Shown piece after piece: positions 20,354 to 47,446 of a DNA stretch of 64,000 nt. Location of the stretch: assembly GCA_053919585.1 (NCBI GenBank), contig CM132790.1; one strand, given 5' to 3'. Below the pieces are notes generated by a model that saw only the letters and a list, made by a program, of their open reading frames with translations, searched no databases and was not told the DNA's origin. The position numbers and the translations under genes were made by a program. This stretch comes from Euprymna scolopes (Eukaryota). The first letter of the stretch is position 1. The number at the start of each line of letters is the position of its first letter.

Positions 20354-20389
20354 ACAGACCTGTTTCGTTGTTTCACAACTCATCAGTGC
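20354..20389 (-). ncRNA. Minimal type I hammerhead ribozyme motif with intact core
   Basis: Minus strand GCA-CTGATGA-GTTG-TGAAA-CAAC-GAAAC-AG-GTC-TGT: complete CUGAUGA/GAAA core, 4-bp stem II, GUC cleavage triplet, short stem I and a 2-nt stem III loop (dimer-type). Confidence 0.8.
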
Positions 20390-20399
20390 CGCTAGACTA

Positions 20400-20477
20400 A
20401 CACCTCTCCCAAGCCGAGGATCGAACCTAGAACCGTCGTGATGACAGTCGGCAGTTCTACCCCTTGACTACGGAATC
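20400..20477 (-). mobile_element. tRNA-derived SINE head (Asp-like, GTC in loop) with Pol III A and B boxes
   Basis: A box TAGTCAAGGGG (20460-20470) and B box GGTTCGATCC (20418-20427) at tRNA spacing; CTGTCA anticodon-like loop. The acceptor stem is not intact, so it is not a tRNA gene. Confidence 0.75.
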
Positions 20478-35225: not shown

Positions 35226-35289
35226 AAAATAACACTAAAGCTATATTTTATTTATTTATTTGCGAACTACTTTCCTGATCTTTATAATT

Positions 35290-35490
35290 GTTTTTTCACA
35301 ACTTTTCGGCCAACTATTTCTCTGACCTTCATCGGGTGGTCAATCGCGACTGAATAGAAATGGTGAATCTCACAACTGTATATTTAGGAATTATTGCCTT
35401 TCATGGCCGTTGCCTTTTAACTACGTTTTTGGCCATCTAATCCCTTATCCAATTTTGAAACCTCTATCTCCAGACAATGTTCACGTGGAG
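35290..35490 (-). mobile_element. Old PLE pLTR copy of the family at 39696-40219
   Basis: CACAACTTTTCGGCCAACT..CCTTCATCGGGTGGTCAATCGCGAC and TTGAAACCTCTATCTCCAGACAATGTTCA align to the arm and spacer of the young copy. Confidence 0.75.
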
Positions 35491-38599: not shown

Positions 38600-38915
38600 G
38601 ATCTTTTCAGGTCATCTATTGTGACGTCTGACAGAAAACGAAAGTAAGGGGGTTATTTTGTCCAATTTTGACTGACTAGCACGCTAGTTTTCTCGGGTGA
38701 CTCTTGATTGTTTGATATTGGATGAATTGTTAACAGCCTATTATTTACTACACCGTTGTAAATTTTGCAGAAATAACGGATTCCTAATTTCTGAGCTTCA
38801 CTGCGATTTCTAGAGGTCTCAATATATTCTTTCTTAGCTGTCGTTAGTTTTTTTTTTTTATAATTACTTCTAGCTTCTATAAAGTTTTGTCTGTTTGTAC
38901 TGGGTTGATATGATG
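38600..38915 (-). mobile_element. CR1/Zenon-like LINE internal fragment (tether)
   Basis: QPSTNRQNFIEARSNYKK..TAKKEYIETSRNRSEAQKLGIRYFCKIY is homologous to the 45490-45650 product. Confidence 0.8.
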
Positions 38916-39695
38916 TTGAGATAGTACTGCACATATTGTAGATTTGCCAGCCCACTTGCCTGTGTGTCATCGTATTAATGTGTGTAACAATTAAATAATT
39001 TACTCCATGTGTATTTATACCCATTAATAAACAGAGATTATGTCATATAAATGTTAAGGTATTCTTTAAGAAGATGACGTAACATTAACTAGTATACTTG
39101 GATCATCTATACAATATTAAGTCCTCGTCATATAATAAGGTATACGCGTGTTTTGCATCATATATAAGAACTAAGAAATAAGGAATAAGTATTTCGTAAA
39201 TATGATTACGTTTTCTAATGACACAATGTAAATATATGGCGCATTACCAATGCTAGTAGGTTTCTTATAACCTATTAAGTTTTTTGTTTAAATTAGTCGA
39301 CAAGGGTGTTTAATTTGCACATGACAGAACAAGACTGCTTACTTTTGTGCTAAGACGTATAAAATAATTGGGCCACGGAACATCGTTACTGTAATAAAGA
39401 CGATAACAAATGTAATTACTTTAGAGTAGAAGGAGCGATATACATCGTACGTCCTATCTCTGCCCGTCCACATAGTTCTCTAACCTTTAGAGAAAATTAT
39501 TTTACATGCCTCCGGTCAGTCAAGGTCGCATGTCTGCTACTATAAATGACCACGGAAAACATGAATGTGGTAAATTTCCTCGATCAGAGAATCCATGTGA
39601 CATTTGGGCGGAGCAGAGGAAATCTGTAAATCCACTACTCGATCTAAGCATTTGCTGATGCAGTATGTACGATATATTTTATGTCGTTTAGCATT

Positions 39696-40219
39696 TTAAT
39701 TTTATTTTATTTCGGACTATTAGTCTCATCTTATCTTTTTATTGGTGCACAACGTTTCGGCCAACTTCCTCTGGCCTTCGTCAGGTGGTAACCGCGACGG
39801 ATAGGAACTTCGAATCTCCTATCTGCATTCTCAGCCATCACTGCCATCCGTAGTTGTTGTCGTCTCACCACATTTTTGACCAATTACCTCTGGGGCCCGT
39901 GGAGCAGTTGATAGAGACGTAGAATCTCTACGGTCCCAGATGAACATTGTCTGAAGATAGCGGTTTCAATCCCACCCAAAGCGTGCCAGAGGTAATTGGT
40001 CAAAAATGTGGTGAGACGACAACAACTACGGATGGCAGTGATGGCTGAGAATGCAGTTAGGAGATTCGAAGTTCCTATCCGTCGCGGTTACCACCTGACG
40101 AAGGCCAGAGGAAGTTGGCCGAAACGTTGTGCACCAATAAAAAGATAAGATGAGACTAATAGTCCGAAATAAAATAAAATTAACATACAATGCCCATCTC
40201 AAAAATAAAAAATTCCAAA
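39696..40219 (+). mobile_element. Young non-coding PLE insertion: inverted pLTR pair plus 36-nt tail, flanked by a 13-bp TSD
   Basis: 198-bp arms 39696-39893 and 39986-40183 with one mismatch, 92-bp spacer, tail 40184-40219, and TSD GTCGTTTAGCATT at 39683-39695 and 40220-40232. Confidence 0.9.
40092..40131 (+). ncRNA. Minimal hammerhead ribozyme motif (mirror copy at 39748-39787, minus)
   Basis: CAC-CTGACGA-A-GGCCA-GAGGAAGT-TGGCC-GAAACGTT-GTG: stem I CAC/GTG, 5-bp stem II, palindromic ACGT stem III (needs a dimer) and a GUU triplet. Confidence 0.75.
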
Positions 40220-42428
40220 GTCGTTTAGCATTGTCAAGAAAATGAATCTAATATTTTGATGGACAATGTATTTATATAATCCCTGTAAACCATTTGATGC
40301 GACCGTAAACATTTTACAATTTATATTCTTAAACAAGCATTAAGTCAAAGTAATGAAACATTTATCCACGTATTGGCATCATTATAGCAAGGGTGATTAA
40401 TAGCCATGACACATTATTCCATGACATGCCTACGATCGTGATTTATTAGATTGTGTTGTTATTCAGGATGCACATTTACAAAATAAATAAGTTGATCCTT
40501 GATATTTTCATCCTAAATTTTATAGAACATTGACATGTGTTATATATCCCAGGGGATAATGTATGCGTTTATATCAAGCACTGCATAAATTCGAAGATTA
40601 AAAAAAGCTAAAGTATTAGCACATAAAACAAGTACACGGACCAAAGTATATGAAATACCGATAAATCGTATATGTAAATAGCGGAATAAATATAGAAACT
40701 ATAATACATTTACTTTCTCGTTTTATTGTTAATATTATACACTTAACTGTAACACAAGTAAAACATGAAAATGATTGAAAATATGCTAACAAATATTTAA
40801 CACTTTACAGAATGTGGTATATGTAAATATATGTATATGTATTTTTTAATACATATATATATATATATATATGTATATTTATAAACCTATTTCCGCATAA
40901 AATTATTCATGTATATAAATGATTCCCAAATAATGTCGCCCTGTATTATTTTATATGTTGATATACGTGCGTCGCTAAAAAAATAACCTTGATGTTGTTT
41001 TATAGTAAGTATTGATAATTTTCGAACAATCCATGCATGGAATGCCAAAAAAGATTTTAAATCGATAGGTGTAGATACTCCCGGGGCAGTTGGGCTAAGC
41101 GGTGTTGGGATGAAGTTTCCAACTAATCATTAAAATAGCGAGATAATCTATTTTTATTAGATAATCCACTAATAGATAGCTATTAATAATTAGTACGCAT
41201 TCATTAATAGAATATCATCATACAACCGCAATATCTCTGCTTACCGAGAGAAGATTCGACCTCATATTTCAAACGGTAGTTTATATAATTTATTCTCTTT
41301 TACCTCACTAACAGCGGAGTAAATTATCCCAATGGCTTGAATTGTTATTTGTTTTTTTCTTCTTGCTGAACGTTATCAGTTTTCTTCCTTGGGCCCACCT
41401 TCAAAAACTTGGAGGAGGTACTGTAACATAGGCCCACTCGGAGATATTACTCCATCCCGTTCTAATCCACTCCAATCAGTTCCTCACTGATTCAGACCTT
41501 TTAAATATGCTTTATGGGGTTGATATCTGCTACCTCATCTCATTTTTTGATTCGTTTAGTCGTATCTGATGTGGTCGTTATTATAACATAGAAATACTCC
41601 TTCCTCATTATCACTATAATTTTCCGCTGGTTCTATTCGAAAATACAAAACATTCCCTTGAATCTTTCACGTCGTCGCTATTGCGTTCGAATTGTACTGC
41701 CATTCTTACATAAAGTTTACATCGTTTTCGGTTCTCATATTCAGTGATTACAATCTACGATTTGGGATATATCAGCTGGATCTTGGAAGCTCTGGAGAGA
41801 GAAAAGAAAAATCCAAAAAAATCGGGCAATTAGATAGAATTTAGTGCGCAAAAAAGGTGTTGGGCGCAAAAAGCTGTTAGTTAGTTAGGGGTGATATTTC
41901 TAAATACTCATCGAAGTTTCAGGAATCCAAGCAATGAAATCCGAGTGAATCCGTATGAGAGAAAAAATGTATATCTTAAACTTCTAAAGCCAGCCATAAA
42001 GATTTAAGTATATGAGCTTTGATATGCCCCGTATGAGATGTTATAGAATAAAAAACAAAGCCATACTTGATAAGACTAACCATGCGGAAAGAGTTGATCA
42101 GGACACTTTTGGGACGAAGGAAGTCGTCCATTTCGAGGGAGGTGGAAACCTCTAGTCTGCGGCATATGGATGGCTGGAAAGTAGCTGATGTGAATCCTAG
42201 GTAAAGCCCCTACACACACAAAATAAATGCCAAAAATATCAGAAAGGTTCTGATCTTATAAAAAAATAAAATATTGTAAAGTCGGCCGTGGAGGGTTGAC
42301 TGAAAGAGATTTTTTTTTTTTTTAGCCTGATCTTTCTAGCCGTGTGGTTGTGTAGATGTAAAAATAAAAAAAATGTACTAAATGTAAAAATGCATACATT
42401 TTTTTTTGTGAAATATGGAAGGGAAGGA

Positions 42429-43796: not shown

Positions 43797-46700
43797 GGAA
43801 AACTCTGAAACTAAACCAAAGGGGAGAGAGGCCTCTTCAGTCTTGGATGACAACCTTCCTAGAGCTGGTGACTCAAACAAATTCACCGGTTTGCAAACCT
43901 AAATTGCTTAAGGAGTAGATAGGCTCTGTCTATCGCCCGACTTCCATACTCCTTCTTTGCCTATTAGTCAAGCGCAGAGACACTATCTCGGTGATTCGAC
44001 AGAAACACCCAGCGGTAGATCTTGTTTCCTGGCTAGGGCAACGAACGCCGTTCTTCCCCCTTCCCAGCACGCCCAACCCCTAAAACTGAACATTTGGGAG
44101 TGCTTGAGTATAAGATATGCCAGAGCGATTAGATTCGGTTGACCTTCTTCTAATGGGTTGAGGGTACCGGATTGACAGTTCCTGGCTTCTGTTCCCGACA
44201 GGTAGTACAGGAGCCCTAACTCTGGTAGCGCTTAGAGCGGCTGCTCCATCAACAGTTGAATAATATCGGGTTGTTTGTAGTGCCATGACGCGCATGGAAA
44301 GGGACCCTGCACTCATCCCCGGTGGGCTTTTCTGAGGCCACAATCCTAATTGGAGAAAGGTCAGCTGATGGTCTACTTGTGATGCATGTCTTATGCTCTG
44401 CATATCCTCTTGTTTAGCTCCCGCTTTCCGAAACTCTTTAAAAAAATATGACGACAGTACAATTTTAAAGTAAGCTTAAACCAGGATTAGGGACAAACAA
44501 ATGAAACTCGCCTCCTCCCTTAAGGCTCTCATTCACAAATATCCGTGGGCTTAGAACTAACTTAGCTGATGTTGAAGCATTTCTCTTAACAAATACCCCG
44601 GATATCTTAGCACTAAGTGAGACTAACCTACACTGCTCCATTCCCTCTAACCACTTTAACATGCCTGGATATCTCCCACTCTGTCGTAAGGACTCTGACA
44701 GACATATGCACGGACTTGGAGTTTACATTCGTAATACCCTTCCCTTGACTAGAGAAACAAACCTAGAAACAGATGATCAAGCCTTTATGTGCTTTAGACT
44801 AAACATGCAACACAATATTAGCTACAATTATTTTCTCTACCGCTCTCCCTCGACTCAGGATTGCTCCATAATAAACAAAGTATCTGACAGCATATACACG
44901 GCACTGTCCCTCGACACTAGCGCACAAATACATGTATTTGGTGACTTTAATGTCCACCACAAAAACTGGCTTGGATTCTCTACTCACACAGATGCAGCGG
45001 GCAGCACAACCCAGAGCGTCGCTATGTCTGACTCCCTATCACAAATTGTTACGTTTCCAACCCGTTTCCCTGACCAGGAAGAACAAAACGCATCACTTCT
45101 AGATTTGTTTTTGACCACAGTTCCCGATGACTGCATAACGAAGGCCAACAGCCCACTCGGGAACGCTGATCCTGCAGTGATAATGGTTGAAATCGCCCTA
45201 AACTCTAGACCAAAAACTGAAGAGCCAGTGCTCAAAACAACGAGATATTATAATAAGGCTGACTGGGAAGCCATCAGGGAACTAATTAGATATGCTCCAT
45301 GTAAAAAATATTTTCTCTCTCCTTGCTGAACAATGTGCAAACGAGACCAGTGACTGGTTCAAAACTGCAATCGAAGCGCATGTTCCCATGCGGAAATTTT
45401 ATAGTAAGCCCCACTCTCCCCAATGGTTTACGTCGACTTGTGCAACTGCCATTGCTCCAAAGCAGCATGCATACCGTAGGTTTAACCGACATCAGTCGAG
45501 TTCAAACAGACTGAAGTATATAGAAGCTAGAAATAACGTTAAGAAAGAAATAGCGACAGCTAAGAGAGAATTTACGGTTACCACTAAAAAGCGCATCGAA
45601 GCACAAACACTAGTAACTCGAGACTTCTTGAAAATCTACAGTAAATAATGGGCAATCAACAAGTCCCCCACTAACCAACAATCACGAGGTTGTCTCCTCA
45701 GCAACCGACAAGGTTAACATGCTTGCCAGTCGGTTTACCTCAAACTCCACACTGGACCCTTCCAACCACCCCCTACCTTACTTTCCTATGCGGACAGACG
45801 CCACACTAGACGATCTGAAAAATACCCCTGCTCAGGTGCATGCTATCATAAAAAAAACCTTGACACCTCAAAAGCATGTGGACCCGATCTTATCCCAACT
45901 GTGCTATTAAAAAAATGCTCAGCCGAAGTAGCTCCAGTTCTCTCCAAACTCTACAACAAATGCCTTAATGAAGCTTGTTTTCCGGGCTGTTGGAAAACTA
46001 CTTCTGTTGTACCAGTATTTAAGAATTCTGGCGAAAGGACAGACCCATCAAATTATCGCCCCATTAGCCTCCTCCCACTTTTTGCCAAAATATTTGAGAC
46101 CATAATTTACCATGCCCTAGTCCATCATCTTACAGATGCTAAACTACTGACTGACAAACAATATGGATTTAAACAAGCCCGTTCCACAGCAGACATCCTA
46201 ACTGTGATCTCTGAACGTATATACCATTCACTGGACAAAGCGGGGAGGGCAGAGCGGTAGCTCTAGATATATCTAAGGCTTTTGACAGGGTATGGCATGA
46301 GGGTCTCCTCAGAAAATCAAATCATACGGTATCACTGGTAGAATACTTAACATAATTAAATCCTTCTTAGATAAGAGAAAAATCCAGGTTGTCCTCGACG
46401 GTCGAACATCTAAACAATATGATATAAATGCGGGGGCCCCCCAGGGTTCTATCCTTGGACCTCTATTGTTCCTGATATTCATAAATGAGCTCCCCGACAG
46501 CATTGCCTCTGAGATGGGTATATATGCTGATGACACTACACTCTATGGCAGGCACGACATGAAGACGAATGAACACATATCTAAAGAAATGGCAGAAACA
46601 CTAGAGGAAGACCTCCAATCTGTAGTGGAATGGGGACAAAAGTGGTTGGTCGCGTGCAATGCTGCCAAGACTAAACTAGTTTCATTCAATAATTACAAGA

Positions 46701-47446
46701 AACCCTCTCTACCACCCATAGCAATGGCCACCGATTCTTTATCTGAGAGTCCATCTTTCAAACTCCTTGGCCTAACGTTCACAGAAAACATGAGTTGGAA
46801 CAATTACATTGAAGGCATTGCCAGGGCCGCTGCAAGAAAGGTGGGCTCCCTCTACCGTGCTAGAAAACTACTAAGATCCGAAAGTATCATGTACCTCTAT
46901 AAGGCCACCATTCGCCCATGTATGGAGTATTGCTGCCACATCTGGGCTGGTGCATCTGCTACTAGTCTCTCGCTCCTTGACAAGGTTCAAAAGAGAGTCG
47001 CAAACCTGATAGGCCCTGAACTGGCATCTAAGCTTCAGCCTCTGTCCCATCGACGAAATGTTGCATCCCTCTTTCTTTTCTACAAGTATTTTAGTCGTGA
47101 ATGCTCTGGCGAACTGCAATCACTTGTGCCCCCACGACGTGAGCACCCTCGACAAACCCGATAGGCTGCTAAATCCCACCCCCACACTGTAGAGATACCT
47201 AGATGTAAAAGATCTTTTTACTCTAATAGTTTCTTCCCCAGAACCGCTAGACTCTGGAATTCCATTCCAGGTCCCTGCTTCCCCAACAGTACTGACGTGC
47301 AGAAGTTCAAGTGGAATGTTACCCGACACGTTGCGGCCCAAATCCCTACATAGTACCCCAGTAGTTGTTGCCCCTGATAGTAGCCCCCTACACCAAAATG
47401 GCAATTTGCCTTGTTTGGGGTGAAAATGTAATAAAAAAAATAAAAA
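43797..47446 (+). mobile_element. Full-length CR1/Zenon-like LINE with a single EN+RT ORF, disabled
   Basis: TSD TAATATA (43790-43796 and 47447-47453), ~650-nt 5' UTR, APE motifs FTNIRGL/SET/LYRSP/GDFNVH, RT motifs YRPISLL/PQGSILGP/YADD (46523-46534) and an A-rich tail. Confidence 0.95.
44520..47353 (+). pseudogene. LINE ORF2 (AP endonuclease-reverse transcriptase) with several frameshifts and stops
   Basis: Split across ORFs 44661-45329, 45292-45648, 45719-45910, 45901-46260 and 46466-47164. Premature stop at 47162; natural stop probably TAG 47351-47353. Confidence 0.93.

What the first reader, a model, noticed from the sequence alone, without database searches (positions are those of the whole stretch)
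39683..40232. Very young coding-free PLE insertion forming a 198-bp hairpin with mirrored hammerheads
Seen: two 198-bp arms differing at one base, a 92-bp spacer, a 36-nt unpaired tail and a perfect 13-bp TSD. Each arm carries an intact-core hammerhead facing outward. Known: 5'-inverted pLTRs with a short 3' tail are characteristic PLE integration products. Inference: the PLE family was active recently, and read-through from either side would give long dsRNA (a siRNA source) that also sequesters the ribozyme.
Basis: partly seen in the sequence, partly recalled or inferred. Interest (0 to 1): 0.72.

Follow-up and report, generated by a model that had tools for sequence, protein, structure and literature searches.

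The report
Young hairpin insertion of hammerhead retrozyme
This is a real, very recent insertion of a small protein-less jumping element that carries a hammerhead ribozyme motif and was pasted in as a mirror-image pair, the way Penelope-like retrotransposons insert. It is one of hundreds of such hairpin loci in this large mollusc genome, so it is ordinary here.

Summary
There are two inverted arms of 198 nt with 1 mismatch (201 nt at 99%), a 92-nt middle piece, a 33-36-nt one-sided tail and a perfect 13-bp target-site duplication.

The element belongs to a 436-bp non-coding repeat family. The genome holds at least 2,669 exact copies of its 37-nt hammerhead string, and some copies form 100%-identical tandem arrays.

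The locus is an inverted, tail-less 3' copy (unit 227-424) joined to a direct copy (unit 132-436 plus 1-23). The "spacer" is the element's own 5' head, which carries tRNA-type A/B-box-like motifs. Copies tend to begin at this position.

About one third of the family's loci on contig C1 are the same outward-facing mirrored pairs. None face inward.

An intact autonomous Penelope-like element (PLE) in the same genome shows the identical design: an inverted 3' copy lacking a 30-nt tail.

The hammerhead has an intact core of the minimal, dimer-type PLE kind. Helix II covaries between families, but Rfam does not call the motif.

I found no ORF-bearing version of this family. I found no empty allele and no read-through transcription at this locus. 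The dsRNA/siRNA idea remains an inference.

This scan has already met the same kind many times elsewhere in this genome. Verdict: a new member of a known kind (animal non-LTR retrozyme / non-autonomous PLE, similar to Sm-alpha).

The parts
39683..39695 (.). Left copy of the 13-bp target-site duplication (GTCGTTTAGCATT)
   Evidence: Exact direct repeat D5. Contig X1 record 5 spans 39534-39708 across this junction.
39696..39893 (-). Inverted, tail-less copy of the element's 3' body (family unit about 227-424). This is the left arm.
   Evidence: blastn against the natural unit L024:403-838 matches unit 227-427 on the minus strand at 98%. Its outer end falls where the inverted pieces of other loci end (unit 420-430).
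39741..39793 (-). Hammerhead motif of the left arm (mirror image of the right-arm motif)
   Evidence: CTGACGA core found at 39784 on the minus strand. Sequence is identical to the right-arm motif.
39894..39985 (+). The 'spacer': the 5' head of the direct copy (unit 132-226). It carries an A-box-like motif TGGAGCAGTTG at 39900-39910 and a B-box-like motif GGTTTCAATCC at 39962-39972.
   Evidence: It aligns collinearly with the tandem unit. The box motifs are my own reading. ARAGORN and Rfam do not call a tRNA here.
39986..40183 (+). Right arm: the 3' body of the direct copy (unit 227-424)
   Evidence: Five other loci are 100% identical over arm plus tail.
40086..40138 (+). Type I minimal hammerhead motif. 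Helix I is GGUUACCAC / GUGCACC. The core is CUGACGA, followed by an extra A. Helix II is GGCCA/UGGCC, then GAAA. Helix III is reduced to the palindrome ACGU. The predicted cleavage site is after 40128.
   Evidence: Motif scan. Helix II appears in the minimum-free-energy fold. The features match the minimal hammerhead described in PMC4209133. The 37-nt string occurs 2,669 times against 0 for the control.
40184..40219 (+). One-sided 'tail' (unit 425-436 plus 1-23 of the next unit). It is present only on the direct copy.
   Evidence: In most family copies the tail runs on to unit 43. The PLE tail is described in PMC8557442 and PMC11167929.
40220..40232 (.). Right copy of the 13-bp target-site duplication
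   Evidence: Contig X1 record 7 spans 40189-40814 across this junction.

Best explanation
The locus is a single, recent retrotransposition event of a 436-bp non-coding, hammerhead-bearing repeat family. That family is an animal 'non-LTR retrozyme', meaning a non-autonomous element copied by the reverse transcriptase and GIY-YIG endonuclease of Penelope-like elements supplied in trans.

Shown here:
- The insertion is an inverted copy of unit 227-424 without the tail, joined through a 2-nt overlap (GG) to a direct copy of unit 132-436 plus 1-23 with the tail, between 13-bp target duplications.
- The same design recurs at many loci of the family and at an intact PLE of this genome.
- Direct copies tend to start at unit 124-134, just upstream of tRNA-type box motifs.

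Inferred from published PLE biochemistry (PMC11167929):
- The endonuclease cuts both target strands with a 13-bp stagger.
- Each 3' end primes reverse transcription on element RNA at one of two nearby internal start sites (about unit 424-428, and about unit 23-43 of the next repeat).
- The two cDNAs run towards each other and are joined. This gives mirror-image arms with a tail on one side only.

Inferred for the RNA:
- Master copies (tandem arrays, or copies driven by the internal A/B-box-like motifs) give transcripts that the dimer-type hammerhead can cut into units.
- At this hairpin locus any read-through RNA would pair arm to arm and hide both ribozymes.
For: Anatomy of the locus.

Family:
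- A 436-bp tandem array of 6 copies at 100% identity.
- At least 850 candidate copies, 40 of them scored at 98-100%.
- 2,669 exact copies of the 37-nt hammerhead string against 0 for the control.

Target sites: duplications of 10-16 bp at 10 other loci, and (TA)n targets at 5 of 24 loci.

Mirrored design is the rule: on C1, 20-21 of 62 loci are (-,+) pairs and none is (+,-). Across hammerhead families, 14 of 14 close opposite-strand pairs face outward.

[quoted passage not shown] It carries a 352-bp 100%-identical inverted copy of its own 3' end that lacks the last 30 nt, and it sits in (TA)n. Its own hammerhead-like motif has the same layout: extra A, 5-bp helix II, GAAACGUU.

Hammerhead: the helix II pairs change on both sides between families while the core stays fixed. 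The variants are GGCCA/TGGCC, GGCCG/CGGCC, GGTCG/CGACC and GTCCT/AGGAC.

5' ends: 5 of 23 tail-bearing copies start at unit 124-134, P about 2e-4.

Expression: a polyA RNA library holds element contigs.

Literature: PMC8557442, PMC11167929, PMC4209133, PMC7229834 and bioRxiv 10.64898/2026.07.22.740005.
Against: - No ORF-bearing relative of this 436-bp family was found. The dominant PLE shares only the hammerhead layout, not sequence.
- Rfam gives no hammerhead or tRNA match.
- Helix I is weak (3+3 bp here) and is absent from the minimum-free-energy fold.
- No copy in my sample starts exactly at the predicted cleavage site. The nearest start 2 and 4 nt upstream.
- The tail ends at unit 23 here but at unit 43 in most copies.
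- Only contigs, not raw or long reads, were available. Neither the inner junction nor the palindrome as a whole is independently confirmed.
Confidence: 0.86

Rival explanations
1. The element is a tRNA-derived SINE copied by a LINE (a LINE with an APE endonuclease and RT lies 4.5 kb away). The inversion would then come from L1-style twin priming.
For: There are A/B-box-like motifs and clustered 5' ends. Duplications vary in length. LINE fragments lie at 44661-47164.
Against: The element has no poly(A) or LINE-like 3' tail. Inverted pieces end at a fixed site 30-50 nt short of the direct end, which is the PLE tail signature. The family forms head-to-tail tandem arrays and favours (TA)n targets. 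An intact PLE here has the identical design. The hammerhead is of the PLE minimal type.
Confidence: 0.06
2. The palindrome is an assembly artefact, for example a chimeric long read or a mis-joined repeat.
For: Complex PLE insertions are known to trouble assemblies (PMC8557442). No read-level confirmation of the inner junction was possible.
Against: The structure is asymmetric: a unique 92-nt middle piece, a tail on one side and one arm mismatch. It has a perfect 13-bp duplication. Short-read contigs support both outer junctions. About 20 loci on C1 alone have the same polarity and comparable spacing.
Confidence: 0.03
3. The element is a foldback or MITE-type DNA transposon with 198-bp terminal inverted repeats.
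For: It has long near-perfect inverted arms flanked by a duplication.
Against: The inverted piece varies from 43 to more than 500 nt between loci and is absent at 6 of 24. Direct copies have variable 5' ends and a fixed 3' end. Tandem arrays exist. Duplication length varies from 10 to 16 bp. These are signs of reverse transcription, not of cut-and-paste.
Confidence: 0.02
4. A plain direct insertion was later partly duplicated in inverted orientation by a local replication template switch.
For: The arm junction has a 2-nt microhomology.
Against: The duplication flanks the whole composite, not the direct copy alone. The outer end of the inverted piece coincides with the family-wide tail-less end. 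The same polarity recurs in all mirrored loci.
Confidence: 0.03

Closest known systems
Animal non-LTR retrozymes (Cervera & de la Pena 2020, PMC7229834). Li, Clavereau & Pollet 2026 (bioRxiv 10.64898/2026.07.22.740005) argue they are non-autonomous PLE derivatives.
   Same: The family is a non-coding unit of a few hundred nt with one type I hammerhead per unit. It forms tandem arrays and dispersed copies. GC is low (41.5%). Duplications are longer than 4 bp. The element is present in RNA libraries.
   Different: The unit of 436 bp is slightly above the published 170-400 nt range. This locus is not tandem but a mirrored pair. Circular RNA was not tested. The unit also carries tRNA-type box motifs and a preferred 5' end.
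Penelope-like element insertions with pLTR, an inverted 5'-truncated copy and a 30-40-bp tail (Craig et al. 2021, PMC8557442; Frangieh et al. 2024, PMC11167929)
   Same: An inverted copy lies at the 5' side and a tail on one end only. Duplication length varies. The family favours microsatellite targets. The repeat carries a minimal hammerhead with an extra nucleotide after A9, a G10.1-C11.1 pair and a palindromic helix III.
   Different: There is no RT/GIY-YIG ORF in this family and no sequence similarity to the PLE families sampled. The family's usual tail is 52 nt (33-36 nt at this locus).
Schistosoma Sm-alpha / Sj-alpha SINE-like elements with hammerheads (Ferbeyre 1998 and Laha 2000, as cited in PMC2770079)
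   Same: A tRNA-related head with Pol III-type boxes lies upstream of a hammerhead. Copy number is high. Both tandem and dispersed copies exist.
   Different: Sm-alpha is recognisably tRNA-Gln(TTG)-derived (PMC2770079). Here no tRNA is called by ARAGORN or Rfam, and only box motifs remain. Here the hammerhead lies about 130 nt downstream of the B-box-like motif.

Membership tests
Penelope-like element (autonomous) | Single ORF with a PLE-type reverse transcriptase and a GIY-YIG endonuclease | tested here: not met
   The longest stop-free stretch in a trimer of the unit is 55 aa. There is no blastn similarity to 30 GIY-YIG loci. None of 62 loci on C1 has same-strand hammerheads 2-6 kb apart.
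PLE-type insertion product (autonomous or not) | An inverted 5'-truncated copy adjoining the direct copy, with a 30-40-bp tail at one end only | tested here: met
   The same design is seen at an intact PLE, L062. The definition comes from PMC8557442.
PLE-type insertion product (autonomous or not) | Head-to-tail partial tandems (pseudo-LTRs), frequent 5' truncation and a microsatellite target bias | tested here: met
   Tandem arrays are seen. 5' starts are variable. Five of 24 loci sit in (TA)n. These hold for the family; the window copy itself is a single unit in a non-repeat target.
Minimal type I hammerhead of metazoan PLEs (PMC4209133) | Core CUGANGA...GAAA, an unpaired nucleotide between A9 and G10.1, a G10.1-C11.1 pair, and a palindromic 15.2-16.2 / loop 3 | tested here: met
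   The motif reads CTGACGA-A-GGCCA...TGGCC-GAAA-CG-TT. Helix II covaries between families.
Minimal type I hammerhead of metazoan PLEs (PMC4209133) | Recognised by a curated covariance model, or shown to self-cleave | tested here: not met
   No Rfam hammerhead match at E<=10. This is expected for a motif without a helix III hairpin. Cleavage is not testable here, and no copy starts exactly at the predicted cleavage site.
Animal non-LTR retrozyme | Tandem non-coding repeats, each with a type I hammerhead | tested here: met
   L024 holds 6 x 436 bp at 100% identity, each with the motif. C1:50.14 Mb holds 4+4 copies.
Animal non-LTR retrozyme | Expressed as a covalently closed circular RNA | not testable with these tools
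   Only Logan contigs were available. A polyA RNA library holds element contigs, but contigs cannot show circles.
tRNA-derived SINE (Sm-alpha-like) | tRNA-related head with Pol III A and B boxes and a defined transcript 5' end | tested here: inconclusive
   Box-like motifs start at unit 140 and 202, and the sense strand has no TTTT run. Five of 23 copies start at unit 124-134. No tRNA is called by ARAGORN or Rfam.
MITE / foldback DNA transposon | Fixed terminal inverted repeats and a fixed duplication length | tested here: not met
   The inverted piece varies from 0 to more than 500 nt and duplications from 10 to 16 bp.

The most novel reading that the evidence does not exclude
The family may be a Pol III-driven, tRNA-headed retrozyme. 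Its defined-start transcripts would be copied by PLE enzymes on both target strands. It would thereby have seeded several hundred near-perfect 200-bp hairpin loci in this mollusc genome, and these would act as a dispersed source of endogenous small RNAs against the family itself. That would make it a self-limiting retroelement.
Probability: 0.12. Interest if true: 0.55.

Novelty: new member of a known kind. Interest (0 to 1): 0.25.

Why it matters
The locus is a clean, dated example of the two-strand priming model for Penelope-type insertion. Both cDNA start sites, the tail, the junction microhomology and the target stagger can all be read directly from one undamaged copy. The same design is also seen in an intact PLE of the same genome.

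It also explains an oddity noted earlier in this scan. The 'spacer' with Pol III-type boxes in such hairpins is simply the element's own 5' head.

Beyond that, it adds one more family to the known animal retrozyme / non-autonomous PLE class. For annotation, such loci (an estimated several hundred for this subfamily alone) will be mis-called as MITEs, miRNA-like hairpins (Rfam gave a weak MIR7723 match) or assembly errors.

Tried and rejected
- Rfam at gathering and E-value thresholds, on the window and on a unit dimer, gave no hammerhead or tRNA match. It gave only spurious hairpin-miRNA and snoRNA matches.
- ARAGORN found no tRNA.
- blastn of the unit against 30 GIY-YIG loci and 4 larger PLE regions gave only AT-rich chance matches and one decayed 73% relative lying beside a PLE fragment. 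I judged that one coincidental.
- A recurring 17-18-nt match (unit 408-424) at a fixed place in PLE loci was rejected as low-complexity. Its E-value is 1.5, and it lies on the antisense strand or inside the ORF.
- I looked for copies that begin exactly at the predicted ribozyme cleavage site, which would be a sign of in-vivo cutting. The two nearest start 2 and 4 nt upstream, so I make no claim.
- I looked for an empty-site allele and for confirmation of the palindrome in public runs. All runs are stored as contigs. No empty-site joint appears among the listed joints, and no contig bridging the inner junction is listed. This is not evidence of absence.
- The organism B contig ends at 39689, so presence or absence of the insertion there is undecided.
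I did not try another route.
Full report
**1. The observation**

One search finds inverted arms at 39693-39893 and 39986-40186 (201 nt, 99% complementary) with 92 nt between them. It also finds an exact 13-bp direct repeat, GTCGTTTAGCATT, at 39683-39695 and 40220-40232.

A base-by-base comparison shows one internal mismatch (40057 T against A in the left arm). A second difference at arm position 199 marks the true end of the arm. "198 bp with one mismatch" is therefore correct, and the one-sided tail is 40184-40219.

Each arm carries the string CTGACGA-A-GGCCA-GAGGAAGT-TGGCC-GAAAC-GTT|G, at 40095 (+) and 39784 (-), reading outward.

**2. What the repeat is**

The right arm plus tail has at least 850 candidate copies in the window's own genome (5.9 Gb, 925 contigs). 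Forty were scored at 98-100% identity, and five are 100% identical over 233 nt.

Some copies stand in head-to-tail arrays. L024 holds six units of 436 bp at 100% identity. I used one natural unit (L024:403-838) as the ruler and built no consensus.

The unit has 41.5% GC, no stop-free stretch over 55 aa and no TTTT run on the sense strand.

Mapped on this ruler, the window element has two pieces:
- an inverted copy of unit 227-424;
- a direct copy of unit 132-436 that continues into unit 1-23.

The two pieces overlap by 2 nt (GG). The "92-nt spacer" is therefore not filler. It is the stretch of the direct copy (unit 132-226) that reaches further 5' than the inverted copy.

**3. The design is the family's rule**

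I mapped 24 independent loci.
- Twelve have an inverted piece whose outer end lies at unit 420-430, with a direct copy that ends at unit 43 of the next repeat. That is a one-sided tail of about 52 nt.
- A few carry the tail on the other side or on both sides.
- Six have no inverted piece.
- Ten have 10-16-bp target duplications at the element ends.
- Five sit in (TA)n.

The exact 37-nt hammerhead string occurs 2,669 times against 0 for the reversed control. On contig C1 these hits form 62 loci. Twenty to twenty-one of them are (-,+) pairs 88-900 bp apart, facing outward as in the window. None is (+,-).

Across all hammerhead families, a looser pattern gives 50,933 matches against 25 for the control. 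In the first 100 places listed, 14 of 14 close opposite-strand pairs face outward.

By extrapolation from C1, this subfamily alone should have several hundred such hairpin loci.

**4. Link to Penelope-like elements**

The published signature of PLE insertions has four parts: frequent 5' truncation, partial tandems, an inverted 5'-truncated copy at the 5' side, and a 30-40-bp tail at one end only (PMC8557442).

In vitro, a PLE protein cleaves and extends both target strands. It starts reverse transcription at two nearby internal sites, and the tail is the sequence between those sites (PMC11167929).

This genome is full of PLEs, with more than 15,000 GIY-YIG candidates. One intact copy (L062) has these features:
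- a 352-bp, 100%-identical inverted copy of its own 3' end that lacks exactly the last 30 nt;
- an insertion site in (TA)n.

The window element has the same anatomy in miniature.

The PLE's own hammerhead-like motif is CUUGAAGA-A-GCCCG...CGGGC-GAAACGUU|G, identical in 38 of 40 copies, with U at core position 3 in all 40. It has the same layout as the unit's motif.

However, the unit shares no other sequence with the 30 PLE loci sampled. No locus on C1 has two same-strand copies of the motif 2-6 kb apart. I therefore found no ORF-bearing version of this family. Mobilisation in trans is the better reading, in line with the recent proposal that animal retrozymes are non-autonomous PLE sequences (bioRxiv 10.64898/2026.07.22.740005; PMC7229834).

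**5. The hammerhead**

Rfam does not call it, even at E<=10 on a dimer. This is expected for a motif whose helix III is only A-CG-U.

The motif meets every feature listed for metazoan PLE minimal hammerheads: the full core, an unpaired nucleotide after A9, a G10.1-C11.1 pair and a palindromic helix III that can form only between two copies (PMC4209133).

Between families in this genome, helix II changes on both sides while the core stays fixed. The variants are GGCCA/TGGCC, GGCCG/CGGCC, GGTCG/CGACC and GTCCT/AGGAC. This argues for selection on the fold.

Three weak points remain. Helix I is only 3+3 bp in the window variant and is absent from the minimum-free-energy fold. No copy in my sample begins exactly at the predicted cleavage site. 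Activity is untested.

**6. The 5' head**

The middle piece carries A-box-like (TGGAGCAGTTG, 39900-39910) and B-box-like (GGTTTCAATCC, 39962-39972) motifs. No tRNA is called there.

Five of 23 tail-bearing copies, the window copy among them, start at unit 124-134, just upstream of these motifs. The probability is about 2e-4, or about 0.01 after allowing for the choice of window.

This points to a defined RNA 5' end. A Pol III start is the obvious candidate, as in the Sm-alpha elements of Schistosoma (PMC2770079), but it remains an inference.

If it holds, the window's direct copy is a full-length transcript copy rather than a random truncation.

**7. Age and independent support**

Both arms share subfamily variants (unit 263 A, unit 373 C). 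They differ at one internal base. The right arm plus tail equals five other loci exactly. The duplication is perfect. The insertion is therefore very young, and the single difference could even be a reverse-transcription error.

Public runs were available only as contigs.
- Contigs of X1 cover both outer junctions (39534-39708 and 40189-40814). X1 may be the source sample.
- No empty-site joint is among those listed.
- No contig bridging the inner junction is listed.
- In the related organism B, the contig stops at 39689.
- A polyA RNA library (X8) holds many element contigs but has zero depth on the flanks.

The family is thus represented in RNA, but there is no sign of read-through at this locus.

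**8. The dsRNA idea**

A transcript across 39696-40219 would fold into an almost perfect 198-bp hairpin of -404 kcal/mol. Whether such a transcript or small RNAs from it exist is untested.

**9. Rivals**

- A LINE-copied SINE with twin priming does not explain the fixed tail-less end, the tandem arrays or the match to the PLE's own design.
- An assembly artefact is unlikely, given the asymmetry, the duplication, the junction contigs and the many like loci.
- A foldback DNA transposon is excluded by the variable inverted piece and the variable duplication length.
- A later local inverted duplication is excluded because the duplication flanks the whole composite.

**10. Earlier notes of this scan**

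The same kind has been reported many times in this genome. One note describes a 582-bp hairpin with an unexplained box-bearing spacer. The present analysis explains that spacer as the element's own head.

**Limits**

I did not try another route.

Noticed in passing
window 20354-20477 (-): A different short element. A clearer tRNA-like head (...GGTTCGATCCTCGG...) is fused directly to a canonical-looking hammerhead (CTGATGA-GTTG-TGAAA-CAAC-GAAAC-AGGTC). It lies between (TA)n runs.
   Followed up: partly
window 35245-35489 (-): An old, decayed relative of the same 436-bp unit, 68% identical to unit 175-421. Its hammerhead core is mutated (CCGATGA, GAAAAG). The lineage is therefore much older than the young burst.
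   Followed up: partly
L062:5200-5260 (-) and 39 other copies in L032-L064: The dominant autonomous PLE family carries U instead of C at hammerhead core position 3 (CUUGAAGA...) in 40 of 40 copies. This would give a U3-G8 pair, or a bulged U. Whether this core can cleave is unknown.
   Followed up: partly
G000:C1:50143674-50147203: A mirror-image array: four inverted units followed by four direct units of the same family, with a period of about 458 bp rather than 436 bp. Other tandem pairs on C1 have periods of 451-465 bp, so the unit length varies between arrays.
   Followed up: no
G000:C1:13902763 and 13906627 (+): Two identical hammerhead motifs of another family (CTGAAGAAGCTCGGAGGTTACCTCGTCCGAAAC) lie on the same strand 3,864 bp apart. 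That is the spacing expected of a full-length PLE with hammerhead-bearing pseudo-LTRs.
   Followed up: no
window 44661-45329 and 46466-47164 (+): These are LINE fragments. The ORFs match Exo_endo_phos_2 (E 1e-8) and RVT_1 (E 1e-6, just under Pfam's cut-off).
   Followed up: partly
window 38700-38951: Another very high-copy repeat. Contig word depth is in the thousands to 10^5 in all four runs, including the polyA RNA run. I did not identify it.
   Followed up: no
window 39864-40015: Rfam gives a weak MIR7723 hairpin match (25.5 bits, E 0.022), caused only by the inner ends of the two arms. Such loci could be mis-annotated as miRNA precursors.
   Followed up: yes
window 39911-39927 / L024:554-570: By eye, the head holds a 5-bp stem, AGAGA/TCTCT, around a 7-nt loop. 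The loop is CGTTGAA in the tandem unit and CGTAGAA in the window copy. The middle letters TTG in the unit match a Gln anticodon, the same tRNA from which Sm-alpha is derived (PMC2770079). This is a weak lead only, with no model support.
   Followed up: no
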